64,000 nt of DNA, taken from the IMG/VR virus record IMGVR_UViG_3300020165_000007, positions 186,001 to 250,000 of that record; one strand, 5' to 3'. The translations under genes and the position numbers were made by a program. The stretch's first letter is position 1, and every line of letters begins with the position of its first letter. The notes below the pieces were generated by a model that made no database searches, was not told where the DNA came from, and saw only the letters and a list, made by a program, of their open reading frames with translations. Positions 1,064 through 58,810 of the stretch are shown piece after piece.

Positions 1064-1756
1064 TTATGCCTTCATCATCGAGGATGGAAAATCGGGTTTA
1101 GATGGAAAATCAGGTTTGTTAATCTTATCTCTTGGTGGTACTTTACCTCCTTCAAAACATTGTCCTATACCAACACATTGTAGCAAACCTTTTATTTTAT
1201 CTTCATCAATACAGAAATCCTCTTTTAGTCCTCCCATAAACTTAGATATACATCCTTGTACTTTCTCACAGTCCACATTGATACCACCGTCTTTAACTGG
1301 TACAGTACCTATTTGACCACCACCTTTACACTTATCACAAATTTCTTTAGGGATACAACCTAATTCACATAATTTACCTGTAGTTTCAGGTCCGATACCA
1401 CCGTCAACTTTAAGTCCATTTTTTCCTTGAAATACTTCAACAACATCCTTAGTCATACTTCCAAAGATACCATCAACAACTAATGGTTGTAGAGGTTCGA
1501 TACCACATGCGTTTAACGCTTCTTGAAATAACTTAACCAACTCACCTTTAGCACCTCTCTTAAGTTGTCCTTTACCGACCAATACTTGACAAAATTCGTC
1601 AGCAATTGGTAAGTATTTTTTTACAGGTACTTCTTTTTTTGGTGGAGCGTCGGTCATTGGTGGAGATACGACTTTCTCTTGTTCATTTAATAAACCCTTA
1701 TATAGACTCTGTATACTCAGTTTTTCATTTTCGGATAGTATGATTCTTTTTCCCAT
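1064..1756 (-). CDS. Peptidoglycan-binding (PG_binding_1-like) domain protein with N-terminal leader
   Basis: LKRGAKGELVKLFQEAL...VDGIFGSMTKDVVEVFQ...LKVDGGIGPET motif; leader MGKRIILSENEK...LLNEQ; Cys-rich C-terminus. Confidence 0.8.
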   Translation of the reverse strand: MGKRIILSENEKLSIQSLYKGLLNEQEKVVSPPMTDAPPKKEVPVKKYLPIADEFCQVLVGKGQLKRGAKGELVKLFQEALNACGIEPLQPLVVDGIFGSMTKDVVEVFQGKNGLKVDGGIGPETTGKLCELGCIPKEICDKCKGGGQIGTVPVKDGGINVDCEKVQGCISKFMGGLKEDFCIDEDKIKGLLQCVGIGQCFEGGKVPPRDKINKPDFPSKPDFPSSMMKA

Positions 1757-1791
1757 AATATTAAGTTTTACTATAAATACTTTTATAAATG

Positions 1792-1817
1792 AAAAATCCC
1801 CATTAATGAGGATTTTT
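1792..1817. terminator. Intrinsic terminator-like hairpin
   Basis: AAAAATCC...GGATTTTT inverted repeat with A/T tails. Confidence 0.55.
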
Positions 1818-1831
1818 CTTAATTAAAACAT

Positions 1832-1975
1832 TTATTTTTCATTCTTAAGTTCATCTCTTACGTCCCAATAATGTTCTCTAAGTCTTCTACCGAGTTGTTG
1901 CTCATTAAGCTTTTCATCTATAATCCATTTTGTTATTACGGAAATAGGTAGGTGGTGATATTCTTTATTACTCAT
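1832..1975 (-). CDS. Small hypothetical protein (47 aa)
   Basis: ATG overlaps end of upstream gene; MSNKEYHHLPISVITKW... Confidence 0.5.
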   Translation of the reverse strand: MSNKEYHHLPISVITKWIIDEKLNEQQLGRRLREHYWDVRDELKNEK

Positions 1976-2511: not shown

Positions 2512-2688
2512 TTATCCACAGCAGGACATATCACAACAATTTCCTTCACACTTTGTTTCATCACAGTGGTCCATTTGACAACATGTTGTCTCCTTAACAC
2601 ACTCTGACTCGGATTCACAACAGGACATTTCTGATGACGTTGCACAACTAAACAATCCGACAGATAACAGAATAAATAAATGTTTCAT
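2512..2688 (-). CDS. Cys-rich metallothionein-like lipoprotein, copy 1 (58 aa)
   Basis: Manual translation MKHLFILLSVGLFSCATSSEMSCCESESECVKETTCCQMDHCDETKCEGNCCDMSCCG; lipobox LFSC; paralog at 7051-7227. Confidence 0.85.
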   Translation of the reverse strand: MKHLFILLSVGLFSCATSSEMSCCESESECVKETTCCQMDHCDETKCEGNCCDMSCCG

Positions 2689-3233
2689 GTTGTTTTGTTA
2701 TTATTATTACAGAATCCCTTAACAGGTACACCTGAACTGGATATAAAATTATCGATAGCTTTAGCCAATTCATCACCCCTATCGTAAGAGACTCTTAATT
2801 CTTCGAGGACACCGTCTTTTAATTCCTTAGACATCTCAAAACTTCTACCCTTATTTACTGCTCTAATTATATCATCGATGAGGTTCACCAACTTACTATC
2901 TAATTTATCTAACAATAAACCGATAGCTTCGTCAGGTGTGTTTACCTTTTCACCCACCTGAACTTTTTTAATTACATTTTTAATTGCAAATACACACTGA
3001 GCAACAGCACCTTCGACGTTATCACAAAGACTGTCAGAATCTGCAAGACCATTTAAAGTTTTAAACAAGCTCATCATAACATTTTTATACTTAGTGACCA
3101 ACTCAAGGGCAGTAATTTTAGGGGGTCTGTTCTGAACTTTATCCTTTACCTTATCAATAATATTTTCATCGACTGAATACATGTTAAGAATGTCGTGTTT
3201 TTCAGACTCAGATATAATAATTCTTTTACTCAT
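2685..3233 (-). CDS. Hypothetical protein with N-terminal leader
   Basis: MSKRIIISESEKHDILNMYSVDE leader; TATTTAT upstream (3248-3254). Confidence 0.75.
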   Translation of the reverse strand: MSKRIIISESEKHDILNMYSVDENIIDKVKDKVQNRPPKITALELVTKYKNVMMSLFKTLNGLADSDSLCDNVEGAVAQCVFAIKNVIKKVQVGEKVNTPDEAIGLLLDKLDSKLVNLIDDIIRAVNKGRSFEMSKELKDGVLEELRVSYDRGDELAKAIDNFISSSGVPVKGFCNNNNKTT

Positions 3234-3452
3234 AATATTCTTTTATTATAAATATCACAAGAAAGAAAAAAGTTAACCCACATTATCTTAAAGAGTCACT
3301 ACAGGAGTTCCCATAAGAAGTCGAAAAAAACACGTCCGAAAGGACGAAAAAAAATTTTTCGGTAATCCGGCATCAGAGAGATTTACAAACAAATAAGCAA
3401 AATAAAACCCCCAAACCGAAGAAAGGGGGTTAAATTTACAAACGTAATAGGA

Positions 3453-4613: not shown

Positions 4614-4620
4614 ATATTAA

Positions 4621-5585: not shown

Positions 5586-6203
5586 TTATAAAGAATTTGA
5601 TAATTCACCAAATCTCTCACTGATTTTATTACCAAACAATTTAATAACTTCTTCTTTATTTGATATAGTACTTAATGCGTTTTTAAAACTATCAAATGCG
5701 CTTTTCTTATTATGTTCAAAATTAATTCTAAACCATGAAGGATTATCTGGATATGTCTCAACATTAAGGCCATTCATGTCTTTTCTAATAACTACATATA
5801 CTCCTCCATAAGTATCAGATTCAGAATCTGATATATAAGGATAACCGTCCTTCGAATAAAGAGGTTTATATACATTCCATTTTAGATTATGTATATCTCC
5901 TGCAATATCCTTTTCTTCATTATTTTCACCATAATTTTTTAATTTAAAAATGTATCCGTTAAAAAAAAACGGAGTTTCCTTGTTTTGACTAGCAACCGAT
6001 AAGAAATTATTAAAGTTTCCATTATCTAATCCAAAGTCGGCATCGAACTTACTATATTTAATGTTTTCATATAGGTCAACCTGACCCAATTGTTTGTTGA
6101 CCATTTGCTGGAACTTCTCGTTCATCAGCTTCATACCACCTGAATGTTGTTCCCTTATAGAGTTTTTTTCTTCCTCCGATATGTTATTTAGTAAATGTTT
6201 CAT
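5586..6203 (-). CDS. Hypothetical protein with N-terminal leader
   Basis: MKHLLNNISEEEKNSIREQH...LMNE; TATTTAT 6221-6227. Confidence 0.75.
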   Translation of the reverse strand: MKHLLNNISEEEKNSIREQHSGGMKLMNEKFQQMVNKQLGQVDLYENIKYSKFDADFGLDNGNFNNFLSVASQNKETPFFFNGYIFKLKNYGENNEEKDIAGDIHNLKWNVYKPLYSKDGYPYISDSESDTYGGVYVVIRKDMNGLNVETYPDNPSWFRINFEHNKKSAFDSFKNALSTISNKEEVIKLFGNKISERFGELSNSL

Positions 6204-6253
6204 ATTAATATCATTTTATTATAAATACTCAGTAACATTAAAAAATTACAATT

Positions 6254-7227: not shown

Positions 7228-7264
7228 GATAATTAATTTATAATTGTTTATACCAATATGTATG

Positions 7265-7335: not shown

Positions 7336-7980
7336 TCATAGAGGTGGTTTTGTCCCTGTTGGTTTTGGTACTGTACCTCCAATATGCGCAATCGAGTCTA
7401 AATAACGTAATGCTTTAGACAACTCTTCAACCCTATACTTTAAATCAGGAGGAGTCATACTCATTAGTTTTCCCTTTGAAGTTCCACTATTCCTAACTTC
7501 TTCTACAAAATCTGGTAGTCTAGATTTTTTAACACGGTTTATAAAATCTTTGAATTCAGTTTTACTTAAATACAACATGTCTTTTAACCATTTTAAGGGA
7601 AGATAGTCACCATCAATTTTTTGAGTTTGTATTAAATCACTTACGATATCAAAAGGTTCTTCGTATTGGTCTTCATATCCAGTACCTTTGACAGTACTAT
7701 TCCAAAAACCACCTATGTTATTCAATATACTACGATTTGTTTCATTAGTATTCATAACTTGATTCACCATTTCCTTATTACGAATATCAAGTAACTCTTC
7801 CCTAGTTTTATTTAAGATAGGTAAAACTTCAGATAATGATTGTTGAACAGTTTTCATTTTTGATAGTTGGTCTAATTGGTCACCCACTTTAAACTCATCA
7901 TTAGATTGTTCATCAATCAAACCATACATCTCTTGTATGTTTCTTTTTTCTTCTTCGGATAATAATATTTGTCGTCCCAT
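7336..7980 (-). CDS. Hypothetical protein with N-terminal leader, flanked by 60-bp direct repeats
   Basis: MGRQILLSEEEKRNIQEMYGLIDEQ; TATTTAT 7998-8004. Confidence 0.75.
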   Translation of the reverse strand: MGRQILLSEEEKRNIQEMYGLIDEQSNDEFKVGDQLDQLSKMKTVQQSLSEVLPILNKTREELLDIRNKEMVNQVMNTNETNRSILNNIGGFWNSTVKGTGYEDQYEEPFDIVSDLIQTQKIDGDYLPLKWLKDMLYLSKTEFKDFINRVKKSRLPDFVEEVRNSGTSKGKLMSMTPPDLKYRVEELSKALRYLDSIAHIGGTVPKPTGTKPPL

Positions 7981-8005
7981 AGTATTATTGTTTACCAATA
8001 AATAT

Positions 8006-8066
8006 CCAATTTTTCCAAAAAATTTTAATCAATAAAAAACCCCTCCGTATTGGAGAGGGTCTTATT
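8006..8066. repeat. ~60-bp direct repeat copy B
   Basis: Near-identical to 7265-7324; overlaps the last codons of the 8025-8660 gene. Confidence 0.9.
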
Positions 8067-8660
8067 CCAACCTTCATACGCAATGGCTGTAGTACGTTCA
8101 AGTACTTCTGCAAAGTATTCTTCATTATCGTTAATTAAATCAACCATTACTGCCCTTTCATCTTCCCACCAATTATCAGTCTTTAAATTATTTCTCATCC
8201 ACTCGTTTTCAGACAGTGTTATTAAATAACGAGTTAAGTGTAATGATTCATGAGCCAAAATTCTGTTAATATATCCTGGTGATGATGCTCTTTGCACATT
8301 TATAAATTCAAATAGTTGGTCCCTATAAAAATTGGTTAAACCACCAATATATGCATCATCCATTTCCGTCCTTCCTTCAGATTCCATTTTGGTTATGTGT
8401 TCCTCAGCACCTTCTCTAGTTAGACCTGCAATTTCATTAGTACCAAAAGCATCAAAAATAGATAAACTACTATCCCCAAAAATTAAATGATAAGGTTGTA
8501 ATTTAATGTCCTTTTTATCTATAACATCAAATACACCAACGGTAACTAATTCATGTAGTAAAACACCTGTTTTTTTGGGTAAAGAAATGGACTTACTGAT
8601 AGATTTTTGTTCTCTATCTTCCAACTCTTCTTTTAATACTTTTCGGATTAATTCTTTCAT
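8025..8660 (-). CDS. HExxH (zincin-like) putative metallopeptidase with N-terminal leader
   Basis: ILAHESLHLT...NEEYFAE; leader MKELIRKVLKEE; TATTTAT 8665-8671. Confidence 0.65.
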   Translation of the reverse strand: MKELIRKVLKEELEDREQKSISKSISLPKKTGVLLHELVTVGVFDVIDKKDIKLQPYHLIFGDSSLSIFDAFGTNEIAGLTREGAEEHITKMESEGRTEMDDAYIGGLTNFYRDQLFEFINVQRASSPGYINRILAHESLHLTRYLITLSENEWMRNNLKTDNWWEDERAVMVDLINDNEEYFAEVLERTTAIAYEGWNKTLSNTEGFFID

Positions 8661-10433: not shown

Positions 10434-10454
10434 GTTTTTATTAGTGAGTCTAAG

Positions 10455-13074: not shown

Positions 13075-13701
13075 ATGGAAGATAATCTATCAGAGAAGTA
13101 TAACGAGTCACAAAGGATTAAACTGTTGTTTGACGGTTTGTTCTTTAACAAGATGGGATTGCCTTGTGATGTAGTGTATCTACCATCCATTTTTCAACAT
13201 TTGGTTGTTGTAAATATTGATTTATCTAAGATGTATCCATCTCTTGGTGGGAACCCTGATACGATTGAAGAACTCAAGAAAGGTAGGTTTCATAGGGACT
13301 TAACTAATTCTTTGAGATATATTGATGTTCTACCTATGGATGTTTATCCATATCCTGTGTTCTCTCTCGATAAAAAAGGTTTTGATGATTTGGATAATAT
13401 TAGAGATGGTGTGTTGAAATCTTATGAAGAAGTGAAAGATGAGATTGGTCATTGTCTAACTGAGGTCGATGTTGAATGGGTTCCTGATTTGGATACTATT
13501 TTAGGTAGGGACACAGTGGATGCAATCGATGAGTATATACTTAGTTTAGATGATGATATATCATTAGCCTTCAAACCATATTTATATTTCATGTATGGTC
13601 AGGGTAAGTGTGATGATATGAGTTTACCGTCAGCATATAAAGTATTTGACGATATCAACCCTGATATAAAATACATGAGACCTGAAAGAATTAAGAAATG
13701 A
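13075..13701 (+). CDS. Hypothetical protein, paralogous family with 11145 and 15530 genes
   Basis: VNIDLSKMYP...LRYID; TATTTAT 13063-13069. Confidence 0.7.
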   Translation: MEDNLSEKYNESQRIKLLFDGLFFNKMGLPCDVVYLPSIFQHLVVVNIDLSKMYPSLGGNPDTIEELKKGRFHRDLTNSLRYIDVLPMDVYPYPVFSLDKKGFDDLDNIRDGVLKSYEEVKDEIGHCLTEVDVEWVPDLDTILGRDTVDAIDEYILSLDDDISLAFKPYLYFMYGQGKCDDMSLPSAYKVFDDINPDIKYMRPERIKK

Positions 13702-14183
13702 GAGATTTAATTAAGAAAGTGTTAAGAGAAGAGTCCGAGTCTATGGACCTGATGCATTTTTGGAGTAACTCACCTAAGGTTACTGATGCAGATAACACAG
13801 AACAAATGGATGATTTCATGTGGCACATCATCAACTATGTGAATTTTCCATCTGACGGTAACTACAGAAGAATTAAAACTTTTATCAAATCTTTAATTAG
13901 GTATGGTTTGATAGATGTTGAATTCTATACCAACATGTATAGATGGTTGAATCGTAAGTTAAGGGAGATATCAACAATTGAAGAAGAATTTCAACTATCT
14001 TTGGATTATGTAGGTGGTGACGACTCATATAACGATTGGAAATGGTATGTTCTGTCTTTTGGTAAAGGTAATTTTGAAAGATTAAAGGAAGGTTATGATG
14101 ATAATATTACATTTGTTGAGTCACTAAACCCTGTAGAATCATTTCAGTATGCATGGCCTCATCCATATGATTTTAGAGACTGA
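13698..14183 (+). CDS. Leader-bearing hypothetical protein, DUF4240-like
   Basis: MRDLIKKVLREE leader; GGDDSYNDWKWYVLSFGK resembles DUF4240 motif. Confidence 0.55.
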   Translation: MRDLIKKVLREESESMDLMHFWSNSPKVTDADNTEQMDDFMWHIINYVNFPSDGNYRRIKTFIKSLIRYGLIDVEFYTNMYRWLNRKLREISTIEEEFQLSLDYVGGDDSYNDWKWYVLSFGKGNFERLKEGYDDNITFVESLNPVESFQYAWPHPYDFRD

Positions 14184-22493: not shown

Positions 22494-22790
22494 TTAGTTG
22501 CCTATAACTAAATCATTAAAATCTAATTTATCCATTCCTCCTACCTCACCCTCTATCTCATCGTACATAAAAGCCTTAACAACCGCAACTATAGATTGTT
22601 CTGACTGTGCAATTTTAGACTCCATCCAATCCTCTAACTGTTCACCGTCTTCCATCGTTTCCCACATCTTATAAGCTAAAGTTGCTATGGTAAACATTTG
22701 TTGTTTGGCCATATACGACCCATCTTTATTCTCTTTGAGGTTCTCTTTTAATTTTTTAAGTTGTTGTTCTGTAATAACTATATTACTCAT
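22494..22790 (-). CDS. Leader-bearing conserved phage protein
   Basis: MSNIVITEQQLKKLKENLKE; SYMAKQQM...LEDWMESKIAQ. Confidence 0.7.
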   Translation of the reverse strand: MSNIVITEQQLKKLKENLKENKDGSYMAKQQMFTIATLAYKMWETMEDGEQLEDWMESKIAQSEQSIVAVVKAFMYDEIEGEVGGMDKLDFNDLVIGN

Positions 22791-25190: not shown

Positions 25191-25527
25191 GTATATTTAA
25201 GTACTTCTTTTCTTCTGTTCTATTCAATACATAGGACATGTCAAAGTCTATACCTAGTCTTTCTTTTATACTGTTTTCTAAGTACTCCTGCATTTCAGGT
25301 GATTGTTCATAACCATAAAGAATAAGATTAGAAACTGATGGGAGTACTTTTAAATCAATAAAATCCAGTATATTTCTAACAATTATAAAGTAAGGTTTAC
25401 CATTCTTATGTAATACCGCAGTATCGTAGAGAAAACCTGGTAGGGTTCTATCTTCTAACTCTTGAAATTTGAGTCCATCGACAATATTGTCTATTTGTTT
25501 CTTTAATACATCAGGTAGAGTACTCAT
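25147..25527 (-). CDS. Hypothetical protein
   Basis: ORF coupled to upstream gene. Confidence 0.6.
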   Translation of the reverse strand: MSTLPDVLKKQIDNIVDGLKFQELEDRTLPGFLYDTAVLHKNGKPYFIIVRNILDFIDLKVLPSVSNLILYGYEQSPEMQEYLENSIKERLGIDFDMSYVLNRTEEKKYLNILIPLLQGGTDSSNQ

Positions 25528-26438
25528 TTTTTTAATTTTTTTAAGTTAATAGGTACTACATTTCCTTTATCTAAATACATTAATATATCCACTGATTTAT
25601 AACTACCATTCAAATATCTTTTAATGAAATCTTCTTTTTGACCTACACCAGTTTTTACCTGTACAGTATATAGTTTTCCTTTAAATTCTACTATTAAGTC
25701 GATACCTAATTTCATATCTATAAAATCACCATCCCCGCCTTGTCTTACAACTGTACCTCCCCACTTATCACTTTCAATCCACTTTACCGCTTTATTTTCA
25801 GTCGCTAAACCTATTCTATCCGTAACCCCTAATTTTTTATCTGCTATATCTATTAAGTTATGCCCATCAAACATATTACCAAACTCATCTTGGATATCAT
25901 TTTTATATTTTTTTAAGATGTCTTTTAATCGGGTCGGGTTATTTTCCTCAGAAATTTGTTGTAAGATATCATTTCTACCTTGTTCAAATAAAATGTCAGT
26001 AACCAACTCAGAAAGTAAGGTATAATTTGTGTTTATCTTATTTGAGTGGTGCCACCTTCCGTTAACTTCAACTCTTTTAAAATTTTCTAACTCTTCTAAG
26101 AGTTTATTGTAATACCAAGAATTTATTTTATTAGCATTTTTTAACTTAAGTAACCATTCTTTTGAGTTTTCCTTTTCCTCGTTACTCATAGGTGATTTTA
26201 TTTCATCCTGAATGTCGTTAACCAATTTTTTAAGACCTAATCCATTATCACTATGTAAAAATGCTCTTAAATTATTAATTTTTTTTCGTATCTCTGACTT
26301 ATTAAAACTCACGGGCTCGTTATTGGGTATACCGTCCATATTTGGTATACCGTCATAGTTGTCCCCCCGCGGGTGCATTGGGTCATTGGGTCCGATAAGG
26401 TCTTGTTCTCTTAATATTTTACGTATAAGTTCTTTCAT
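25524..26438 (-). CDS. Leader-bearing protein with C-terminal PD-(D/E)XK-like nuclease motif
   Basis: MKELIRKILREQ; G..TEN.A...GIDLIV...TVQVKT. Confidence 0.6.
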   Translation of the reverse strand: MKELIRKILREQDLIGPNDPMHPRGDNYDGIPNMDGIPNNEPVSFNKSEIRKKINNLRAFLHSDNGLGLKKLVNDIQDEIKSPMSNEEKENSKEWLLKLKNANKINSWYYNKLLEELENFKRVEVNGRWHHSNKINTNYTLLSELVTDILFEQGRNDILQQISEENNPTRLKDILKKYKNDIQDEFGNMFDGHNLIDIADKKLGVTDRIGLATENKAVKWIESDKWGGTVVRQGGDGDFIDMKLGIDLIVEFKGKLYTVQVKTGVGQKEDFIKRYLNGSYKSVDILMYLDKGNVVPINLKKLKK

Positions 26439-26476: not shown

Positions 26477-27148
26477 TTATGACCCATATAATCTCCATGC
26501 ATTTCTATAGTTGTGGTCCATACCAGTCATATACAATCCGTACTTATCGATTATATCTAAAAAAGATTCTTTTGCTGCCATCCCTATTTCAGTAGTTACT
26601 TCATACAAATCATCTTGATGAATATCGTGGTCAATCATAAATAGTTCGTCAAAGTCCCATCTAGTATCATCATCTCTATCTAAAAATTGTACTGAACCGT
26701 TAGTTATGCGGACCTTCATACCTAATTCAGTACCATATGGATTTTCATCAGGGTTACCTTCCGTCCTACTGATAATCCCAATAGATAAAGGTGTCACATC
26801 CATTTCATATCCTCCTGAAGATATATGTCTTTTTTTACCTATACCTATTTCTTTTTTGGCTAATTCAAGTGCTTTATCATATCCACCATAGAATTTTATT
26901 TTCAGTTTGTCAATCTCCTCTTCGTATTCTAAACAATTTATACCAATATATCTACAGGGTGTTAGTTCTGTACCATTTTTACTCCAATAGTCAAATAAGA
27001 ATTCTTCTACTTGAGGACTTAGTTCCTTTTTTTTAGGTGCTCCTTGCCAACCTTCACTCATTTCATACTCATCACTTTTAGGTGAAGCGTCAGTAACATG
27101 TGAATACTCTAAGTCTTCTCTCAATATTTTACGTATAAGTTCTTTCAT
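26477..27148 (-). CDS. Leader-bearing hypothetical protein
   Basis: MKELIRKILRED; TATTTAT 27158-27164. Confidence 0.75.
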   Translation of the reverse strand: MKELIRKILREDLEYSHVTDASPKSDEYEMSEGWQGAPKKKELSPQVEEFLFDYWSKNGTELTPCRYIGINCLEYEEEIDKLKIKFYGGYDKALELAKKEIGIGKKRHISSGGYEMDVTPLSIGIISRTEGNPDENPYGTELGMKVRITNGSVQFLDRDDDTRWDFDELFMIDHDIHQDDLYEVTTEIGMAAKESFLDIIDKYGLYMTGMDHNYRNAWRLYGS

Positions 27149-28839: not shown

Positions 28840-29196
28840 ATGAAGGTAATGATAAATAATAACATTTTTAAAGTCAAATTATGTACGAGACAAAAATCGA
28901 TAGAGGAGGGAATGCAAAATAAAAACTTTAACGAATCTTTTAATGGAATGTTATTTATGATGCCAAAAACTACCGAACAAAGTTTTTGGACGTATAACTG
29001 TATTATTCCTTTAGATATATTAATGATTAATAGAGGCGAAATAAATGAGGTACATCATAACTGCAAACCTTGTCACAAACAATCACAATGTGATTCATAT
29101 AAAGGTTACGGTGGTGAAGTATTAGAATTACCTGGAGGTACTTGTAAAAGTTTAGACATTAAAAAAGGAGACTCAGTCTCCTTTTCTTTAGTTTGA
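28840..29196 (+). CDS. DUF192 family protein
   Basis: GMLF...SFWTYNCIIPLDILMI...VLELPGG...IKKGD; start reassigned to 28840. Confidence 0.85.
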   Translation: MKVMINNNIFKVKLCTRQKSIEEGMQNKNFNESFNGMLFMMPKTTEQSFWTYNCIIPLDILMINRGEINEVHHNCKPCHKQSQCDSYKGYGGEVLELPGGTCKSLDIKKGDSVSFSLV

Positions 29197-30603
29197 TTTA
29201 CTTTCGTTAATCTTTTCTTTTAGAACTTCAACGAATCTTCGTTGAATCATCTTTACAAACTTAACGTATGGAGTGTCTCCCTCTTTTTTACCATACTTCT
29301 TCTTACCTGAAGGAGGTCTCTTACTTCTACCAAAATAATTTAGTGCTGAAATATTTGTAATACATTTATGTCCTCCTGAATTTGCTTGAATCATCTCCCA
29401 AGCAGGAACACCTAACTTATCAAGTATTGCCCATTCACCATCCGTTAAATCATTATATGGTTTGTTCATTATTGTCTTTAATCTATCCATATACTCTTCA
29501 CCACCGTCTATAGACCTAACTTTATCTCCATAAAACGCTTCTAAATCGGCGTTAGTAAACCCTACAGACTCTTGGTCAAAACTTTTACCTGATTCTGATA
29601 TCCACTTAATAGTTGATAATGGTATTATTTTATCTCTGAGTTGTGGTTCCCATTTCGCTAAGACTTCTTGAGCAATCTCACCTAAGTTTACACCTTTAAG
29701 TTCTCTCTCACCCTTAAATGGATTACAACTTGCCTGAACTAATCCCATGGGCCAAGCGATAACTAAAAAATCTGCGTCAGGATTGTTTTTAAATGGTGTA
29801 TATCTATCATATGAACCCGGTTTAAACATAGAACCTCCACCATATTGAACGATTATTCCGTCATCTACTTTTACTTTATCACTACTATCTTGTTTTTTCA
29901 CATAACCTTGTTGATTTAAAACCATTTCCTCAGGTGATGCATATCCTTCTTCTTGTGCAATTCTATTAATATTTTGAAATATATTTAATAGTGATGGTGA
30001 TGAAGACATAACTAATTTTTCTAAGAACTTAGGTTTGTTTTTATAAGCCAGTAGTAGTTTATTCGTGGCCAACCCTAAAGCCATTTTATTTTTTTGTAAT
30101 GATTTATCCTTTTGTAATTTAAATATAAAGTTCATTATATCTTGAGGTTCAAGACCAAATCTAGCGAAATCTGCCGAATCAACTGTTGATATTAGTGTAA
30201 TATCATCTGATGGGAATATGTCTGATGGTGACATAATATCAGAAAGTGTTGCCACATTTGAACGAGATGACCTAAAGGATGTTGAAGTATCTCCCTCAAC
30301 ACCCGTCTGACTATCGTGGTGGTCTGTATGAACCACAAACATAGGTTTACCATGTGCAAAATCTACAAGAACTGGCATTGTGTCTCCTTGAGCGTCCTGT
30401 TTTTTGACTGCAAACTCTTTATCTCCGTATTGAATTATCTCAGAGTCTACTACTTCTATTCCGTTATTTTCCAAATAGTTTTTCATCGCTAAGGCGGTAG
30501 TTACACCGTCTAAGTCTTGGTGGAAATATATCTTAGCCTTCTTGTACCTATCTGCAAGTGCCTTAATATTTCTTAATCCTGTCTCGTTTAATATTTTTTT
30601 CAT
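29188..30603 (-). CDS. DHH/DHHA1-like phosphoesterase
   Basis: YFHQDLDGVTTA, VDFAH, TDHHD, C-terminal GGH. Confidence 0.7.
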   Translation of the reverse strand: MKKILNETGLRNIKALADRYKKAKIYFHQDLDGVTTALAMKNYLENNGIEVVDSEIIQYGDKEFAVKKQDAQGDTMPVLVDFAHGKPMFVVHTDHHDSQTGVEGDTSTSFRSSRSNVATLSDIMSPSDIFPSDDITLISTVDSADFARFGLEPQDIMNFIFKLQKDKSLQKNKMALGLATNKLLLAYKNKPKFLEKLVMSSSPSLLNIFQNINRIAQEEGYASPEEMVLNQQGYVKKQDSSDKVKVDDGIIVQYGGGSMFKPGSYDRYTPFKNNPDADFLVIAWPMGLVQASCNPFKGERELKGVNLGEIAQEVLAKWEPQLRDKIIPLSTIKWISESGKSFDQESVGFTNADLEAFYGDKVRSIDGGEEYMDRLKTIMNKPYNDLTDGEWAILDKLGVPAWEMIQANSGGHKCITNISALNYFGRSKRPPSGKKKYGKKEGDTPYVKFVKMIQRRFVEVLKEKINESKSN

Positions 30604-30917
30604 TACGCTCCTATACTTCCAATGTTTAAGTCACCATCCAAAGCGAATGATGCCACTTTTAAATCAGGGTTCTCTTCAACTCTAAACCTATACTGAGTTC
30701 CGTATCCACCATGACAAACTTCACTTAATTTATCACCTCCCAACTCTATTAACCAATTTAGTTTGTTTTTATCTTTTACGACTTCTTCAATACCTTCTAC
30801 TTGATTTATTGGTATACATTTACCTTCTTGCTCATTCAAATATTGTCTTTTTGTTGCTGACTCGTGAAGGTTTAATATTCTATCTTTTTCCGAGTTATCA
30901 ATTCTGAATTGTCTCAT
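30603..30917 (-). CDS. Leader-bearing hypothetical protein
   Basis: MRQFRIDNSEKDRILNLHESATKRQYLNEQ; TATTTAT 30934-30940. Confidence 0.7.
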   Translation of the reverse strand: MRQFRIDNSEKDRILNLHESATKRQYLNEQEGKCIPINQVEGIEEVVKDKNKLNWLIELGGDKLSEVCHGGYGTQYRFRVEENPDLKVASFALDGDLNIGSIGA

Positions 30918-36450: not shown

Positions 36451-38082
36451 TTAATCTACCCTAAATACATAATAATCGTGACCATCAATTCTAATATCAT
36501 ATTCTACACCATCATAATGTGATATATTGTGACCAACACCATCCGTATCCACCGCATCCTCAATTATCTCATCTTTATTTAAGAATTCCTCAAGGTCTAA
36601 ATCGTAATCTTTAATATAATTTTGTGGGTTAGACCTAACGTCACTTAAATACTCATCCACCTTTTTTTCTATCATTTCCTCAGTGGGTTCTCCCTCAGGA
36701 CTTAATGTTAAATCATCTCTCTCCTCTTCTAACTCATCTATTTTATCATATACTTCACCCCTTTCATCACTACTATAAGGTAACGAGTCAGTATCTCTTG
36801 TCTTTCTATAAAGTTCTTCAATCTCTTGGTCTAATTCTTCGTGTCTTTCCTTTTGTTCTGTAGATAACGGTAGTTCATCTTCATCGAATATAGATTCCCA
36901 ATCATCTCTAACATAATCATAATACCAACTCTCAAAATAACTGACAATAGAATCTATGTCTATGTAATTCATCAAATAGTCTTCGTTAAATGACTCCATT
37001 AACCCTACGTCATTAACCAAGTCGTTTAATCTAGATTTTGCGAGTTCGTAAACATCATCCCATTCACCCACAATATATTCACTATCTGTTTCATTTTCAC
37101 CCATCCATTTAAATGCTAAAATTTCTCCAGGATAAAAATTATTAGTCTCAGGTATTAAATTATATATGTCCTCATCTTCACCAACTTCATTCACTAACCA
37201 CTCATTTCTTAAACCACTCATCACAGCATTTGCCTTTCTTCCTACCTCATCTAATTCGTTGTTTTCAGGATTCCACGCATCTCTTTCTCTTATATCGTCC
37301 ATCCTCCTTAGTAATCTTTCTCTTCTTATTCTATCATCTCTTTGGGTTCGTCTTTGTAACTCTTGTTTCGCTTTAATTTCGTCTTTAAATAATTCGATAT
37401 CACTAGCGTAATTTGTTGACATGTATCTTTGTATAACATTATCAATCTTTTCAAACTCAGGTGTCCCTAAAATCCACCCCACTTTAAATGAATCATCAGG
37501 CGCATCATAGAAAATTTGTTTTCCATCATATTTTTGTAACATTGCAACTTTATAAAACTTACTACCTGATTTAGCTTTTTTATCTAAAAAATAAAATAAT
37601 TTACCGTCTCTATTGTAGGACATAAAGTGACTATCACTACTTTTAGCTGCTGTACACCATTTACTGCCCGCTCCGTAATAACAACTAGCCTCATGTGTCT
37701 TTGGTGTTATTACAGTAAACCTGTCGTCTTCATACACTATGTCGGCCCCATCTATTTTTTTAACGTCCCTCCTTACCTTATTTTCGTGTTTTTCAATCGC
37801 ATCTGTAATATCTTTTAAAGTATTGTATTGATTAATATCTTTTATTTCTAAATTTTTTTGAAATTTTATAAACTTCTCTACCGCAATTTTCGCTTTAACT
37901 AAATCATCATTTACATTTTCAGATGAAATGACCTTACCTAAAAAGTTTAAAAACTTTTGGTTGGATGATAGTTCTATAGATAATAAAAATATTTTTTTTA
38001 TATCCTCAGGTTTGAACTTATCTTTATATCTTAATAAAAACTCGTCTTTTCTTCCTTCTAATAATACTTTACTAAGATTCAT
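36451..38082 (-). CDS. Leader-bearing protein with PcfJ-like (CYYG..WCT) domain and acidic C-terminus
   Basis: PKTHEASCYYGAGSKWCTA...F..Y...GKLFY; TATTTAT 38100-38106. Confidence 0.65.
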   Translation of the reverse strand: MNLSKVLLEGRKDEFLLRYKDKFKPEDIKKIFLLSIELSSNQKFLNFLGKVISSENVNDDLVKAKIAVEKFIKFQKNLEIKDINQYNTLKDITDAIEKHENKVRRDVKKIDGADIVYEDDRFTVITPKTHEASCYYGAGSKWCTAAKSSDSHFMSYNRDGKLFYFLDKKAKSGSKFYKVAMLQKYDGKQIFYDAPDDSFKVGWILGTPEFEKIDNVIQRYMSTNYASDIELFKDEIKAKQELQRRTQRDDRIRRERLLRRMDDIRERDAWNPENNELDEVGRKANAVMSGLRNEWLVNEVGEDEDIYNLIPETNNFYPGEILAFKWMGENETDSEYIVGEWDDVYELAKSRLNDLVNDVGLMESFNEDYLMNYIDIDSIVSYFESWYYDYVRDDWESIFDEDELPLSTEQKERHEELDQEIEELYRKTRDTDSLPYSSDERGEVYDKIDELEEERDDLTLSPEGEPTEEMIEKKVDEYLSDVRSNPQNYIKDYDLDLEEFLNKDEIIEDAVDTDGVGHNISHYDGVEYDIRIDGHDYYVFRVD

Positions 38083-47857: not shown

Positions 47858-49186
47858 TTACCTAAAGATATGTAATTTTTTATTATTCTCAATCTCGTCA
47901 GGTATTTTAACGTTTGGACTATTCTTTAAGTTAATTACCTGTAGGTTTTTCAAGTTACTTATCCCCTTAGGTATCGTTGTAAGATTATTATTGTTCGGTA
48001 AGGATAGGAATACTAAATCTTTCAACTCTTCGATTTCTTTAGGTAGTTCTTTAATAATACCTTCCAAGTGAAGGGCATTTAGATTTTTAAATCTACCTAG
48101 CGTTTTTGGGATAGTAAGTGCGACTTCATCTGAAGATTCCCCGTATCTATTATTCGACTTAACAAAATCAAATCTTTCAAGATTATCAGGTAGAGTTTCA
48201 AAAAACTCATCAAACCCATATAATGATATAAACTTAGAAGCGGAATCTTTTGGATATTCAACAGATATCGAAGTTCCTTCTCTATTAGTTAAACTTTTCA
48301 TAAATTCCGGTTTAAATACTTCTTTAAGTTCTTCGTTTTTATTCAAAAATTCTATTAGATTAATTTGTCTATCATTTGCCCCCATATACTGATTAGATGG
48401 GAAATGAAACTGATACCTATTTGCAGGTAATCCACTTTTTTCTCCTGTAGTCACACCTCCATCTCGGAAAGATTCAGGTTTGTTTGGAATTACCACATAT
48501 AAAGGACCATCTTTAATATAAGTATTAAAGTAGTTACTTCTTCCAGGTGCAGATGTACACCAACCACTTTCACCTTTTGCAATATCTAAACCATATCCAC
48601 CGTAAAAACAAGCCGCATCGTGCCCTAACTTTCCAGTGTCTTCGATTTTTACAACGGTCCACTTACTACCTTTAAAAATTACTTCACCACCTGGATGTTC
48701 ATAAGTTTTAGCGGCTTCTTCTTTTTCTGATTTAGAAGCTTTAGTTTTATCCAAACTAAAATCTACAGTAATATCTGCTAATTTTTCAATATTAAGTTTA
48801 TTAATATCTCTAAGTTCTTGGTCAAGTTGACCTTTGAACCTGTCGAACTTTTGTAAAGACTCTGTAGTTTTATATAAATCCTCAAAAAATAGTTCTTGTA
48901 ACCTACTCATTTCACTTTTAAATTCTGAAGTACCATACTCCGATTCAGGCTCAAGTCTAAGAAATTGTTTTACCAACCACGGTGTATATGTACCGGCCTT
49001 TTTAATTTCGTCTCCGTCTCTACGAGTCGTAGGGTCAGCTAATACTATTTTATTCAAATCCTCTAAAGACATTCTAGCAGGTTTTACTTTGTCACCTTTT
49101 TTCTTAGGTTCAGTATAAGTCTTCCTAAGAATTTCATAACGACCCTGTTCTAAAATTATATGTCTAATAATACCACTAAATTTCAT
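47858..49186 (-). CDS. Leader plus PcfJ-like (CFYG..WCT) domain plus C-terminal leucine-rich repeats
   Basis: MKFSGIIRHIILEQ; AACFYGG...WCTSAPG...YIKDGPLYV; LKNLNALHL..IKELP.EI..LKDL..LSL..N..L..IP..I..LKNL. Confidence 0.75.
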   Translation of the reverse strand: MKFSGIIRHIILEQGRYEILRKTYTEPKKKGDKVKPARMSLEDLNKIVLADPTTRRDGDEIKKAGTYTPWLVKQFLRLEPESEYGTSEFKSEMSRLQELFFEDLYKTTESLQKFDRFKGQLDQELRDINKLNIEKLADITVDFSLDKTKASKSEKEEAAKTYEHPGGEVIFKGSKWTVVKIEDTGKLGHDAACFYGGYGLDIAKGESGWCTSAPGRSNYFNTYIKDGPLYVVIPNKPESFRDGGVTTGEKSGLPANRYQFHFPSNQYMGANDRQINLIEFLNKNEELKEVFKPEFMKSLTNREGTSISVEYPKDSASKFISLYGFDEFFETLPDNLERFDFVKSNNRYGESSDEVALTIPKTLGRFKNLNALHLEGIIKELPKEIEELKDLVFLSLPNNNNLTTIPKGISNLKNLQVINLKNSPNVKIPDEIENNKKLHIFR

Positions 49187-51703: not shown

Positions 51704-51874
51704 TTACTTATAGCAATTCTTATAAGGTCTACACGAAGCTTTCTGTGAGAACCCCATATCTTTACAAAGCGTTTTTTCACAATAAGATTTACTCATCTTA
51801 CGAGTTCCCTTATCATTACTTTGTTCTTTCTCCTCTAAGTAGGATTTAATAACACGTTTAATAATACTATTCAT
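51704..51874 (-). CDS. Small leader-bearing 4-Cys protein (56 aa)
   Basis: MNSIIKRVIKSYLEE...YCEKTLCKDMGFSQKASCRPYKNCYK; TATTTAT 51880-51886. Confidence 0.75.
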   Translation of the reverse strand: MNSIIKRVIKSYLEEKEQSNDKGTRKMSKSYCEKTLCKDMGFSQKASCRPYKNCYK

Positions 51875-52038: not shown

Positions 52039-53001
52039 TTTTTCTATAATATTATTTTTCATCTCTGCATCCATAATTTCGTTAACTACACTCATTTTAA
52101 CGTAAAAATCACCTACCCCACCATTAGTTTTATATCCTTTACCTTTTAACCTTAATGGTTTACCCGTCTCAGTATTTTTAGGGATACTTATTAATACTTC
52201 ACCGTCAGGGTGAGGGAGACTAATTTCATTTTCCATAATTAAATCATATAATTTAACCGATTTAGTATAAACTAAATCATGATTAATTTTTTCAAAGTTA
52301 TCACTATTAATTACCTCTATTTGTAATATTAAATCACCAAAACCTAAATTAGGTGTAAAATCACCCTTACCTTTAACTCTTAAATATTCACCCGTATTTA
52401 CATTTGGTGGAATATCTACAGTTATGTTCTCTATTTTTTGTTTAATCCCCTTACCCTGACAATTAAAACATGGGTCTATCATAATACTACCCACTCCATT
52501 ACAACTACTACACGGAGTATCTATTATATGGTTAACAAACCCTGAACCCATCTTTCTTCTTATGTTACCACTTCCTTTACAAGTTTGACATACATTCTTT
52601 TTACCTCCACTTCCAGCACAGGTACCACAAGTATTATTGGTTTGATAGGTTATCGCTTTACTAACACCTTTAAATGATTCGATAGGGTTAATTTGTATAT
52701 TTATTTTTTTGTCAGGTCTTCTTCTATTTTTTTGATTTTGACTCCTAAACTGATTCATAAAATTAGAAAAAGGGTCAAATCCATTACTTCTTTGATTATT
52801 GAATAGATTAGGATTATCGTATTTCGCTTTTTTATCATCATCCGTCAATGTTTCATATGCCTCAACAATCTCTTTGAACTTGTCTCCCCCATTGGGGTTA
52901 ACATCAGGGTGATACTTTTTAGATAACTTTCGATAAGATTTCTTAATCTCATCTTTGGTTGATTTTTTATTAACACCTAGTATTTTATAGTAATCCTTCA
53001 T
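52027..53001 (-). CDS. dnaJ: DnaJ chaperone (J domain, zinc finger, C-terminal domain)
   Basis: DYYKILGV...YHPD; four CxxCxGxG; GDL/GDF C-terminal motifs. Confidence 0.93.
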   Translation of the reverse strand: MKDYYKILGVNKKSTKDEIKKSYRKLSKKYHPDVNPNGGDKFKEIVEAYETLTDDDKKAKYDNPNLFNNQRSNGFDPFSNFMNQFRSQNQKNRRRPDKKINIQINPIESFKGVSKAITYQTNNTCGTCAGSGGKKNVCQTCKGSGNIRRKMGSGFVNHIIDTPCSSCNGVGSIMIDPCFNCQGKGIKQKIENITVDIPPNVNTGEYLRVKGKGDFTPNLGFGDLILQIEVINSDNFEKINHDLVYTKSVKLYDLIMENEISLPHPDGEVLISIPKNTETGKPLRLKGKGYKTNGGVGDFYVKMSVVNEIMDAEMKNNIIEKLKV

Positions 53002-57396: not shown

Positions 57397-57644
57397 TACT
57401 TAACATTTTTTAAAGATGGTTCCCAAAAACTTCTTCTAGTCCACATAATCTTATAGAACTCTTTCATGATTTTAGTCACTATTTCGTTTATATCACCACG
57501 TATCTTTCCGTTATTAATTTCTTTTTGAATATTATCTACAATTTTTTTTTCGAATTGTTGAATCGTATTAGAGTTAAGAAAGTCTTTAATCTCTTTCCTA
57601 ACTATCACTTCAATATCCTTTTTATCTGTATTACTTAGTGCCAT
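57396..57644 (-). CDS. Hypothetical protein
   Basis: ORF; TATTTAT 57650-57656. Confidence 0.65.
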   Translation of the reverse strand: MALSNTDKKDIEVIVRKEIKDFLNSNTIQQFEKKIVDNIQKEINNGKIRGDINEIVTKIMKEFYKIMWTRRSFWEPSLKNVK

Positions 57645-57656
57645 CACATATAAATA

Positions 57657-58283
57657 TCACTCATTCTTTAATTTCCAATGAATACCTCCTCCAATTGATA
57701 AATTATTTTCTATATCTGTTCCTAAACCTAAAATAAATAGATTTCCTTTTCTACTCTTTACCGCACCTTCTAAACCCATCCAATTAATTTTTTTCATATT
57801 ATATCTTGTCCCAAAACCCACGTATAATTCTAACTTATTAATATCTTCTATTCTGTTAATAGTTTTTATTGGTATTTCTATATCTTGAATATAACTTCTT
57901 GATAAGATATTATTATTATATATGGTGTCAATCACCTCTACATAACCTATACTATCAATCTGTAATGTATCAATATATACGTTTCTTTGGTGGTATCTTT
58001 GAATAATATTTAATGTATCTACTTCTATAGGTACATTAACAATTACAGTATCATATATAAACTTTGTATTTGTTTTCCATAGTGTCTTAATCTTAACAGT
58101 CTCTATGGTGTCGATTAGAGTTTCAGTCTCAATAATAGTTATAGGCTCAGATATTGTAAGTTTATTATCCTCTTCACACTTAATTAAAAAAAGAATTACA
58201 ACAATTAAAGTAAAAATTGTTATGTTTTTTACTCTTCCCCTGCGGGCATAGTTTTCTTTCTTTGTGCTAACGTTTTGGCCCAT
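57657..58283 (-). CDS. Membrane-anchored/lipoprotein-like protein (DT-rich), possible lysis accessory
   Basis: TM ending LIKC; repeated (I/V)DT; C-terminal beta-strands. Confidence 0.55.
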   Translation of the reverse strand: MGQNVSTKKENYARRGRVKNITIFTLIVVILFLIKCEEDNKLTISEPITIIETETLIDTIETVKIKTLWKTNTKFIYDTVIVNVPIEVDTLNIIQRYHQRNVYIDTLQIDSIGYVEVIDTIYNNNILSRSYIQDIEIPIKTINRIEDINKLELYVGFGTRYNMKKINWMGLEGAVKSRKGNLFILGLGTDIENNLSIGGGIHWKLKNE

Positions 58284-58810
58284 TTTGATTTAAATTTTTC
58301 ATAAAAAGATGTTAATTTATTTATTAACTCAACTAACTCTGTATCTAATTTAATCATATCTCCATTAATATATACGCCGTTATTTTCTCCTATAGTAAAA
58401 TAAAATTCTAAATCAAAGTCAATTACTTTACCTGACCAATCAACATTATTAGGGTAAATATTTAACGTACCAAAGTCAGATAGGTCAGAGACTTCATTAA
58501 CAAAATCATCCATAGTCTCTTGGTAGGATAGCTTCTCATCTGTAGATAGTTCTAAGTCTTGCTTATTCTTTCCATGAAGTGTTATTAAACCTCCAGATAC
58601 CCTATATGTCTTTTGCTTATCTTCTTTAGGTCTTGTATCTAATTCAATCTCCTCCTCACTATCAGCGGCTAAATTATCTGGTTTAATGTCCATTTCTTTT
58701 AAGAGTCCACTTTTAATTAAAGTTTTTTTAGACTCCTCTAATCCACTAACACCCATTAAGTTTCTACTACTTTTTAGTAGATTTTTGATTTCGTCGTATT
58801 GGTTACTCAT
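58229..58810 (-). CDS. Leader-bearing hypothetical protein
   Basis: MSNQYDEIKNLLK...GLLKE; TATTTAT 58825-58831. Confidence 0.7.
   Translation of the reverse strand: MSNQYDEIKNLLKSSRNLMGVSGLEESKKTLIKSGLLKEMDIKPDNLAADSEEEIELDTRPKEDKQKTYRVSGGLITLHGKNKQDLELSTDEKLSYQETMDDFVNEVSDLSDFGTLNIYPNNVDWSGKVIDFDLEFYFTIGENNGVYINGDMIKLDTELVELINKLTSFYEKFKSKWAKTLAQRKKTMPAGEE

What the first reader, a model, noticed from the sequence alone, without database searches (positions are those of the whole stretch)
1064..58810. Shared N-terminal leaders ending in (I/L/V)-X-E on at least 13 unrelated proteins: candidate capsid-targeting cargo system
Seen: two leader types sit on proteins whose bodies are unrelated. Type A, xxI(I/L)SE.EK..I...(Y/H)...E, occurs at 1756 (PG-binding), 3233, 6203, 7980 and 30917, with a variant at 22790. 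Type B, M(K/R)(E/D)LI(R/K)K(V/I)L(K/R)E, occurs at 8660 (HExxH peptidase), 13698, 26438 (PD-(D/E)XK-like) and 27148, with looser variants at 30603 (DHH), 38082, 49186 (PcfJ-like plus LRR) and 51874. Most have TATTTAT 5-25 nt upstream. Known: T4 internal proteins carry a ~10-aa capsid-targeting sequence removed by prohead protease gp21 after (I/L)-X-E. Inference: this phage uses portable leaders to package a variable enzyme toolkit (peptidase, nuclease, phosphoesterase, cell-wall binder) into the head for co-injection.
Basis: partly seen in the sequence, partly recalled or inferred. Interest (0 to 1): 0.85.

Follow-up and report, generated by a model that had tools for sequence, protein, structure and literature searches.

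The report
Shared N-terminal address tags on phage proteins
A giant uncultured T4-like phage puts the same short N-terminal peptides on many unrelated proteins. These peptides look like the tags phage T4 uses to load proteins into its head for injection, so the injected protein set may be readable from sequence, but no one has yet shown packaging or cleavage.

Summary
Nine window proteins carry one of two strictly N-terminal peptides: Type A at 1756, 3233, 6203, 7980 and 30917, and Type B at 8660, 13698, 26438 and 27148. One more is marginal (51874). One is a decayed copy (30603). Three are unsupported or only generic (22790, 49186, 38082). The protein bodies are unrelated to each other.

The tags are widespread. 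The Type B pattern hit at least 120 stretches of public viral contigs, on at least 39 unrelated protein families, including a complete superoxide dismutase. It never occurred internally.

Orthologues swap tag types, and conservation collapses right after the terminal (L/I)-x-E.

Tag-bearing phages are T4-like. Relatives, including a roughly 318 kb jumbo phage, encode a portal, a gp21-type prohead protease (Peptidase_S77), a scaffold and a gp23 capsid protein. The capsid protein has L-I-N-E|A where T4 gp23 is cut.

TATTTAT is the promoter motif of the head genes and also precedes the tagged genes. Tagged genes sit inside head modules. Type B matches the functional positions of the T4 capsid-targeting sequence.

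Best reading (about 0.55): these are capsid-targeting propeptides removed by the prohead protease. This is unproven. There is no virion proteomics, and I did not retrieve the window phage's own head module.

The parts
1064..1756 (-). Type A tagged protein, 230 aa. The tag is residues 1-26 (nt 1679-1756) and ends in L-N-E-Q. A variable Pro/Lys linker follows, then a PG_binding_1 body with no signal peptide.
   Evidence: In 28 orthologues the tag is 80-100% identical, the linker 20-50%, and the body is conserved again.
2685..3233 (-). Type A tagged protein, 182 aa. The tag is residues 1-23 (nt 3165-3233) and ends in V-D-E. The body has no family match.
   Evidence: HMM E=1.2e-12.
5586..6203 (-). 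Long Type A variant, 205 aa. The tag is about residues 1-46 (nt 6066-6203) and ends in L-Y-E. Elsewhere the same long tag sits on the PG-binding body (P0048-P0050).
7336..7980 (-). Type A tagged protein, 214 aa from the ATG at 7980. The tag is residues 1-24 (nt 7909-7980) and ends in I-D-E.
30603..30917 (-). Divergent Type A tag on a 104-aa protein. The tag is about residues 1-29 (nt 30831-30917) and ends in L-N-E.
   Evidence: HMM A gives E=0.0015, and this protein was not in the training set.
8025..8660 (-). Type B tagged protein, 211 aa. The tag is residues 1-11 (nt 8628-8660). The body has an invariant HESLH motif. In the predicted structure the tag is a separate low-confidence helix.
13698..14183 (+). 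Type B tagged protein, 161 aa. The tag is nt 13698-13730. The gene lies downstream of 13075-13701 in a TATTTAT-driven unit.
25524..26438 (-). Type B tagged protein, 304 aa. The tag is nt 26406-26438. The gene is the second in a unit headed by 26477-27148.
26477..27148 (-). Type B tagged protein, 223 aa. The tag is nt 27116-27148.
51704..51874 (-). Marginal tag (MNSIIKRVIK...) on a 56-aa protein.
   Evidence: HMM C gives E=0.013. TATTTAT lies 6 nt upstream.
29188..30603 (-). DHH-type protein with a decayed Type B remnant (MKKILNE). One orthologue carries the full tag. Another is fused to an M15 peptidase plus a PG-binding domain.
36451..38082 (-). Generic N-terminus only (MNLSKVLLE). The body shares a domain with 47858-49186 and with a conserved roughly 252-aa head-module gene of relatives.
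47858..49186 (-). The C-terminal part is LRR.
22494..22790 (-). Not supported.
1773..1779 (-). TATTTAT promoter-like site. The other six sites ahead of core tagged genes are at 3248-3254, 6221-6227, 7998-8004, 8665-8671, 27158-27164 and 30934-30940.
   Evidence: In relatives the same motif precedes the portal, protease and scaffold genes.

Best explanation
The tags are capsid-targeting propeptides of the T4 kind.

Proposed mechanism:
1. Each tagged gene is transcribed late, from the same TATTTAT promoter type as the head genes.
2. The N-terminal amphipathic peptide docks the new protein onto the scaffolding core of the assembling prohead.
3. The gp21-family prohead protease (Peptidase_S77) cuts after the terminal (L/I)-x-E.
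4. The mature protein stays in the head and enters the host with the DNA.

The cargo may include cell-wall binders and hydrolases, an HExxH protein, phosphoesterases, nuclease-like proteins and a superoxide dismutase.

Shown here:
- The tags exist, are strictly N-terminal, are under peptide-level selection, and are modular.
- The lineage has T4-type head genes.
- The tagged genes share a promoter motif and a neighbourhood with the head genes.

Inferred, not shown: docking, cleavage, packaging and injection.
For: 1. The tags are modular and under peptide-level selection.
- The Type B DNA pattern hit at least 120 stretches of viral contigs. 135 of 140 matches start an ORF of 50 aa or more.
- These ORFs fall into 39 BLAST-unrelated body clusters.
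- In 1.36 Mb of fetched loci, scanned in six frames, there were 104 distinct N-terminal hits and no internal one in a substantial ORF. The two classed as internal use GTG starts.
- Several synonymous codons, and K/R and D/E exchanges, occur at each tag position.
- One tagged protein is a full Fe/Mn superoxide dismutase plus a 19-aa add-on.
- Orthologues of the HExxH protein carry Type B, decayed B, MI(K/R)LKDLLxE, a C-like tag, or a signal peptide.
- The PG-binding body carries either of two Type A tags.

2. The boundary falls at the protease motif. In 28 orthologues identity is 80-100% through ...L-x-E-Q, then drops to 20-50% in a variable linker. AlphaFold2 places the tag as a separate helix (pLDDT 50-62) ahead of a body with pLDDT above 90.

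3. The lineage is T4-like.
- gp17, gp18, gp20 and gp23 homologues occur in tag-bearing loci.
- L152 holds Terminase_6N, Portal_T4, Peptidase_S77, a scaffold and Gp23.
- The protease matches phrog_207 at E=2.6e-44. The residues aligned with T4 His85 and Ser140 are invariant.
- The roughly 318 kb jumbo phage of L089 has S77, a scaffold and Gp23, with at least five tagged genes within 21 kb. One of them overlaps the protease stop codon.
- The capsid protein has L-I-N-E|A in 70 of 70 cases. This aligns with T4 gp23 L-T-E65|A.

4. The tags match the T4 determinants. T4 IPs start MKTYQEFIAE, Alt MELITELFDE, gp24 MAKINELLRE and gp67 MEGLIEAIKS. In IPIII, residues 4 and 7 target and residues 8 and 10 direct processing. 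Aligned from the Glu, Type B has its invariant I5, I8, L9 and E11 at exactly those positions.

5. Expression. TATTTAT precedes portal 22/25, protease 43/43 and scaffold 35/37. It is enriched before tagged genes (p=1.2e-4 in the window, 6e-10 in the fetched loci).

6. Cargo. Cell-wall-active proteins without signal peptides carry tags. Annotated metabolic and structural genes in the window lack the tags.
Against: - There is no proteomic or experimental evidence of packaging or cleavage for any member.
- No cultured relative was found.
- The window genome's own protease and capsid genes were not retrieved. About 57 kb of flanks hold only accessory genes. Its link to the lineage rests on shared genes.
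- The similarity to the T4 CTS is a short pattern, not demonstrable homology.
- About 10-15% of genes in this region are tagged. That is many more cargo species than T4 carries.
- Some cargo, such as superoxide dismutase, has no obvious role inside a virion.
- The lineage also encodes ClpP, a ClpC-like ATPase, HSP70 and DnaJ. Any of these could recognise N-terminal basic-hydrophobic peptides.
- In the close relatives of L152 only about 3% of genes near the head module are tagged.
Confidence: 0.55

Rival explanations
1. The tags dock proteins to another phage-encoded machine rather than to the prohead. One candidate is the ClpC-like ATPase with ClpP, giving timed degradation. Another is HSP70/DnaJ/FKBP, giving assisted folding.
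For: - ClpP lies about 9 kb to the left of the window.
- A ClpC-like ATPase occurs in 12 tag-bearing loci, directly upstream of the commonest Type B protein.
- HSP70, FKBP and DnaJ are present in this genome.
- A hydrophobic core flanked by basic residues is the classic DnaK-binding preference. This point comes from my own knowledge, not a tool result.
Against: - Chaperone and degron motifs are usually loose. These tags are near-invariant and positioned to the residue.
- This reading does not explain the (L/I)-x-E end, the conservation boundary, the match to the T4 CTS positions, or the placement of tagged genes in head modules.
Confidence: 0.12
2. The tags are general amphipathic helices for membrane association or self-assembly in the infected cell, unrelated to the capsid.
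For: - Type B puts L4, I5, I8 and L9 on one face, flanked by lysines.
- The tag is predicted to be a free helix.
Against: - There are three or four distinct tag sequences, all ending in (L/I)-x-E.
- The cargo is soluble enzymes.
- The tagged genes share the head-gene promoter motif and neighbourhood.
Confidence: 0.12
3. What is conserved is a nucleic-acid feature: a translation-start or recombination cassette for near-leaderless late mRNAs. The peptide is a by-product.
For: - The tag codons are A/T-rich.
- The ATG lies 5-18 nt from the promoter-like motif.
- ATA at position 8 and TTA at position 9 exceed background usage.
- Conserved gene starts could mediate cassette shuffling, as at the T-even internal-protein loci. 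This last point comes from my own knowledge.
Against: - Leu4 uses TTA, CTA, CTT, CTC, CTG and TTG.
- Position 6 uses AAA, AAG, AGA and CGT.
- Changes are conservative at the amino-acid level.
- Hydrophobic periodicity is kept across tag types that differ at the DNA level.
Confidence: 0.08
4. The similarity is chance, or ordinary paralogy of whole proteins.
For: 38082 and 49186 do share a body domain.
Against: Searches exclude this for the nine core proteins.
Confidence: 0.01

Closest known systems
T4 capsid-targeting sequences: the N-terminal propeptides of IPI, IPII, IPIII, Alt and gp24, removed by prohead protease gp21
   Same: - They are 10-20 residue peptides at the extreme N-terminus of otherwise unrelated proteins.
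- They end in hydrophobic-hydrophobic-x-Glu.
- Hydrophobic residues sit at the positions mapped as targeting and processing determinants.
- The host lineage has gp20, gp21, gp22-like and gp23 genes.
- The cargo is variable and arms-race-like.
   Different: - The sequences differ. Type B is basic (MKDLIKKILKE). Types A and C are 21-26 aa and carry an S/T-E-x-E/D capping box.
- There are at least three or four tag classes.
- There are dozens of cargo families, and about 10-15% of genes in this region are tagged, against about half a dozen proteins in T4.
- The hosts are uncultured and probably Bacteroidota.
- No experimental evidence exists.
Processed head and ejection proteins of giant phages phiKZ, 201phi2-1 and SPN3US
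   Same: - They are jumbo myoviruses with a gp21-type protease.
- Many packaged proteins have N-terminal propeptides cut after x-E.
- The paralogues gp53 and gp54 share an identical 15-residue N-terminus.
   Different: - Their propeptides are mostly longer than 100 aa, and the cleavage motif is S/A/G-x-E.
- They have no family of short tags shared across unrelated proteins.
Encapsulation peptides of bacterial microcompartments and cargo-loading peptides of encapsulins (comparison drawn from my own knowledge)
   Same: A short amphipathic helix and a poorly conserved linker are placed on unrelated enzymes to load them into a protein shell. The architecture is the same as.
   Different: - They are cellular organelles.
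- The peptide is not removed.
- Encapsulin peptides are C-terminal.
- No protease step is involved.
Phage P1 Dar (defence against restriction) proteins packaged in the head
   Same: Anti-defence proteins are loaded into capsids and injected (abstracts only).
   Different: Loading depends on specific protein partners (DarA, Hdf). No common short tag is known from the abstracts I read. The paper itself was not examined.

Membership tests
T4-type capsid-targeting propeptide (CTS) | Short peptide (10-20 aa) at the extreme N-terminus | tested here: met
   Type B is 11 aa. Types A and C are 21-26 aa (one Type A variant is about 46 aa). All sit at a fixed offset from the Met and are never internal.
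T4-type capsid-targeting propeptide (CTS) | Ends in the gp21 cleavage motif (L/I)-x-E | tested here: met
   All core tags end in I/L/V-x-E. Conservation stops there. Caveat: for Type B outside the window, the search pattern itself required the Glu.
T4-type capsid-targeting propeptide (CTS) | Hydrophobic residues at the positions equivalent to IPIII residues 4, 7 and 8, plus Glu10 | tested here: met
   Alignment from the Glu places I5, I8, L9 and E11 on Y4, F7, I8 and E10. This is pattern agreement, not homology.
T4-type capsid-targeting propeptide (CTS) | Carried by proteins of unrelated sequence | tested here: met
T4-type capsid-targeting propeptide (CTS) | The same genome encodes a gp21-family protease, a scaffold and a gp23 capsid protein | tested here: inconclusive
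   Met in tag-bearing relatives L152 and L238. For the window's own 270 kb contig these genes were not reached.
T4-type capsid-targeting propeptide (CTS) | Expressed together with the head assembly genes | tested here: inconclusive
   The tagged genes share the TATTTAT motif with the portal, protease and scaffold genes. Timing is inferred from the motif only. No transcript data exist.
T4-type capsid-targeting propeptide (CTS) | Protein found in the virion with the peptide removed, and the tag sufficient to package a foreign protein | not testable with these tools
   Needs virion mass spectrometry and a tag-reporter packaging assay.
Peptidase_S77 (T4 gp21 prohead protease), for the protease of relatives | Profile match, conserved catalytic His and Ser, and position between the portal and scaffold genes | tested here: met
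   PF03420. phrog_207 at E=2.6e-44. The columns aligned with T4 His85 and Ser140 are invariant. The catalytic role of these two residues is from my own knowledge.
Sec or lipoprotein signal peptide | Hydrophobic core of 10 or more residues after a basic N-terminus | tested here: not met
   The tags are charged amphipathic helices. True signal peptides in the window look different. One distant orthologue has a signal peptide in place of the tag.

The most novel reading that the evidence does not exclude
A very large uncultured lineage of T4-like phages may carry a sequence-readable 'injectome'. The lineage has at least 8000 distinct capsid-protein clusters. In this reading, three or four interchangeable address peptides load dozens of unrelated enzymes into the head, amounting to up to a tenth or more of a jumbo phage's genes. 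The different tag classes might specify different sites in the head or a different order of ejection. The tags would then be a direct way to find new counter-defence and host-takeover proteins in metagenomes.
Probability: 0.3. Interest if true: 0.85.

Novelty: new variant of a known kind. Interest (0 to 1): 0.7.

Why it matters
If the tags are capsid addresses, the packaged and injected proteins of thousands of uncultured phages could be predicted from sequence alone. No other phage group offers this.

It would show that the T4 strategy of a conserved address on variable cargo has been greatly expanded in abundant aquatic phages. It would flag dozens of proteins of unknown function as likely first-minute effectors, such as counter-defence proteins, cell-wall penetration proteins and host-takeover proteins.

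The short tags could also serve as tools for loading foreign proteins into capsids.

If the tags turn out to serve something else, a near-invariant 11-residue N-terminus on 39 or more unrelated protein families is still an unexplained and testable signal.

Tried and rejected
- **Cultured relatives.** Megablast and tblastn against isolated phages found none for the window or for tagged proteins. The only hit was a DUF5661 segment in Flavobacterium phage immuto. The first 50 kb of that phage holds no tags.
- **Other T4-like phages.** 100 kb of cyanophage S-PM2 holds no tags.
- **Literature.** Exact-peptide searches for Type B found nothing.
- **The window phage's own head module.** I walked outward with four look-ups, covering about 37 kb to the left and 10 kb to the right, and found only accessory genes. 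A capsid-protein profile search of viral contigs, and then of the protein database, was saturated by closer relatives and did not return the 270 kb contig.
- **Read-through at the DHH gene.** I considered a stop-codon read-through because an orthologue is 711 aa. The window gene simply ends at TAA and lacks the extra domains.
- **Fold of the HExxH body.** The fold search found no PDB neighbour.
- **Whole-protein paralogy and chance.** Both were rejected.
- **Pfam and PHROG scans.** They gave nothing for most cargo bodies.
Full report
**What the window is.** The window is 31% G+C. It matches positions of about 186,000-250,000 of IMGVR_UViG_3300020165_000007, a 270,383-bp viral contig. Most genes are on the minus strand. 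Annotated genes include thymidylate synthase-like and other metabolic genes, a sigma-70 factor, DnaJ, an Hc1-like protein, an Amidase_2 protein, a TonB-dependent receptor and PRPP synthetase. No isolated phage is close.

- The strict Type A and Type B motifs occur only at N-termini, at a fixed distance from the Met, in all six frames of the window.
- A motif-free comparison of residues 2-19 of 90 proteins gave nine pairs scoring 35 or more, against none in five internal controls. All nine pairs are Type A or Type B.
- BLASTP similarity among these proteins stops after 12-60 residues.
- Profile HMMs confirm 1756, 3233, 6203 and 7980 (Type A) and 8660, 13698, 26438 and 27148 (Type B). These proteins were in the training sets, so the result is partly circular.
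- The HMMs support 30917, which was not in the training set. They make 51874 marginal. They reject 22790, 30603, 38082 and 49186.
- 30603 is nevertheless a decayed tag, because its orthologue in L075 has the full Type B.
- 38082 fits only a generic pattern. It shares a body domain with 49186.

**Selection acts on the peptide, not the DNA.** The Type B genes differ at synonymous sites. Among 103 distinct Type B genes from other contigs, each position uses several codons. Leu4 uses six codons. Position 6 alternates Lys and Arg through AAA, AAG, AGA and CGT. A mild excess of ATA at position 8 and TTA at position 9 remains unexplained.

**How widespread is it?**
- 135 of 140 matches start an ORF of 50 aa or more. 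The median ORF length is 174 aa.
- The bodies fall into 39 BLAST-unrelated clusters.
- In 1.36 Mb of fetched DNA, scanned in six frames without requiring a Met, there were 104 distinct N-terminal hits. The two hits classed as internal use GTG starts.
- A Type A pattern without an ATG found 12 N-terminal cases. It also found five chance matches inside a T4-like portal protein.
- A third tag, Type C, looks like a Type A-like half joined to a Type B-like half. An example is MKKIIKLKESDLENIVKRVLAEQ. It occurs just left of the window and in many relatives.

**The tags are modular.**
- One tagged protein is a complete Fe/Mn superoxide dismutase. Its residues 20-214 align to residues 4-202 of solved dismutases, so the tag and linker are a 19-residue add-on.
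- Orthologues of the HExxH protein at 8025-8660 carry Type B, decayed B, a fourth tag MI(K/R)LKDLLxE, a C-like tag, or in one case a signal peptide.
- The PG-binding body of 1064-1756 occurs with the short Type A tag or with the long 6203-type tag.
- In 28 orthologues the tag is 80-100% identical through L-x-E-Q. Identity then falls to 20-50% in a linker of variable length and recovers in the body.
- AlphaFold2 (mean pLDDT 89.9) models the tag of the HExxH protein as a detached helix with pLDDT 50-62.

**What kind of phage carries the tags?**
- Tag-bearing loci contain homologues of cyanophage S-PM2 gp17, gp18, gp20 and gp23.
- The phage of L016, which carries a Type B protein, has a head module of terminase, Portal_T4, two small genes, Peptidase_S77, a 507-aa acidic scaffold and Gp23.
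- The protease matches phrog_207 at E=2.6e-44. It is invariant at the columns aligned with T4 His85 and Ser140.
- The capsid-protein family is very large: at least 599 viral stretches and at least 8000 protein clusters.
- One capsid-protein cluster belongs to the roughly 318 kb jumbo phage that gave locus L089. Its head module has S77, a scaffold and Gp23.
- That 21 kb head module also holds at least five tagged genes. One Type C gene overlaps the protease stop codon. One tagged protein is a PolyA_pol-family protein.
- In L125 and L050 a Type B gene directly follows the capsid gene.
- The window's phage shares several genes with these loci: a 1153-aa virion structural protein 36% identical to S-PM2 p175, a glutamine-synthetase-like gene, the TonB receptor, and the 38082 body domain.

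**Cleavage logic.**
- T4 gp21 removes 65 residues from gp23, 10 residues from gp24, and short N-terminal peptides from the internal proteins and Alt.
- From the T4 record, gp23 is cut after L-T-E65. gp24 starts MAKINELLRE, Alt starts MELITELFDE, and gp67 starts MEGLIEAIKS.
- The CTS of the internal proteins is MKTYQEFIAE. Its residues 4 and 7 direct targeting, and residues 8 and 10 direct processing.
- Aligned from the Glu, Type B places its invariant I5, I8, L9 and E11 on those positions.
- All 70 full-length capsid proteins of the lineage have L-I-N-E|A. MAFFT aligns this with the T4 gp23 cleavage site.
- Type A tags end in the same kind of motif: L-N-E, I-D-E or V-D-E.

**Expression.**
- TATTTAT sits 5-18 nt upstream of 22 gene starts in the window.
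- It is enriched before tagged genes: 7 of 9 against 11 of 81 (p=1.2e-4) in the window, and 50 of 103 against 261 of 1309 (p=6e-10) in the fetched loci.
- In 80 loci chosen only for their capsid gene, it precedes portal 22/25, the gene after the portal 32/32, protease 43/43, scaffold 35/37 and a conserved post-capsid gene 45/51. It never precedes the terminase or capsid genes themselves.
- I therefore read it as the promoter motif of the head module. This is an inference. No transcript data exist.

**Cargo.**
- Tagged proteins that act on the cell wall but lack signal peptides include the PG_binding_1 protein and an M23 peptidase just left of the window with an MKIKLIDILLEE start.
- In L081, a DHH protein is fused to an M15 peptidase and a PG-binding domain.
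- Weak hits suggest an Acb1-like 2H phosphoesterase and an Mrr-like nuclease.
- Annotated metabolic and structural genes in the window lack the tags.

**Conclusion.** The best-supported reading is a T4-type capsid-targeting and processing system, greatly expanded. I put it at about 0.55, because docking, cleavage and packaging are all inferred and the window genome's own protease was not seen.

The rivals are a docking tag for the phage's Clp or HSP70 machines, a membrane or self-assembly helix, and an mRNA or recombination cassette. None of them explains the (L/I)-x-E boundary, the match to the T4 determinants, or the head-module context.

Noticed in passing
window 27242-27642 (-), with non-coding DNA up to about 28200: A GOLLD RNA (RF02032, 299.8 bits against a gathering score of 150) lies directly upstream of the Type B gene 26477-27148. 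The small ORFs called in this stretch are probably spurious.
   Followed up: partly
window 42082-44835 (-): A full-length TonB-dependent receptor (CarboxypepD_reg, Plug and beta-barrel domains) is encoded by the phage. Homologues at 36-37% identity over 932 aa occur in two capsid-selected loci, L180 and L190.
   Followed up: partly
window 9650-10450: An 800-nt stretch has no convincing ORF and a different base skew. It lies between two divergently oriented paralogues, 9260-9649(+) and 10455-10856(-), which are 33% identical. Rfam gave no match at E<=0.01.
   Followed up: partly
L145:9243-9914; L235:18414-20741; window 52027-53001; L116:6466-8934: The phage lineage encodes its own proteostasis set: ClpP, HSP70, FKBP, DnaJ and, in 12 relatives, a ClpC-like AAA+ ATPase next to a Type B gene.
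   Followed up: partly
L009:12270-12946; L125:5077-5499; L238:6566-6955; many capsid-selected loci: A third tag (Type C) sits on a conserved protein of about 155 aa with a basic Cys-containing C-terminus. The gene lies 2-5 kb from the capsid gene. Two orthologues have a different N-terminal extension of about 95 aa instead.
   Followed up: partly
P0005-P0016, P0021 (orthologues of window 8025-8660): A fourth tag, MI(K/R)LKDLLxE, is 10 residues long and resembles the T4 gp24 propeptide MAKINELLRE.
   Followed up: no
Type B proteins in L012, L030, L034, L055, L078, L238:3397-5706 and others: 14 of 103 Type B proteins have a second motif, (D/E)-F-x-W-(V/I), a few residues after the tag. Its meaning is unknown.
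   Followed up: no
window 2512-2688 (-) and 7051-7290 (-): Two small Cys-rich predicted lipoproteins are 62% identical. Each sits next to a Type A gene.
   Followed up: no
L081:4707-6842 compared with window 29188-30603: The DHH protein is 711 aa in a 91%-identical relative, with an added M15 peptidase and a PG-binding domain. The window copy ends at TAA after 471 aa.
   Followed up: yes
L126: One Type B contig is labelled in IMG/VR as a giant-virus MAG (GVMAG-S-3300010160-96). It may be a mis-binned phage.
   Followed up: no
L062, L073, L026, L053, L119, L123: Tandem arrays of 3-4 Type B paralogues occur, including small LRR-like proteins. In L026 the array lies just upstream of the tail-sheath gene.
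   Followed up: no
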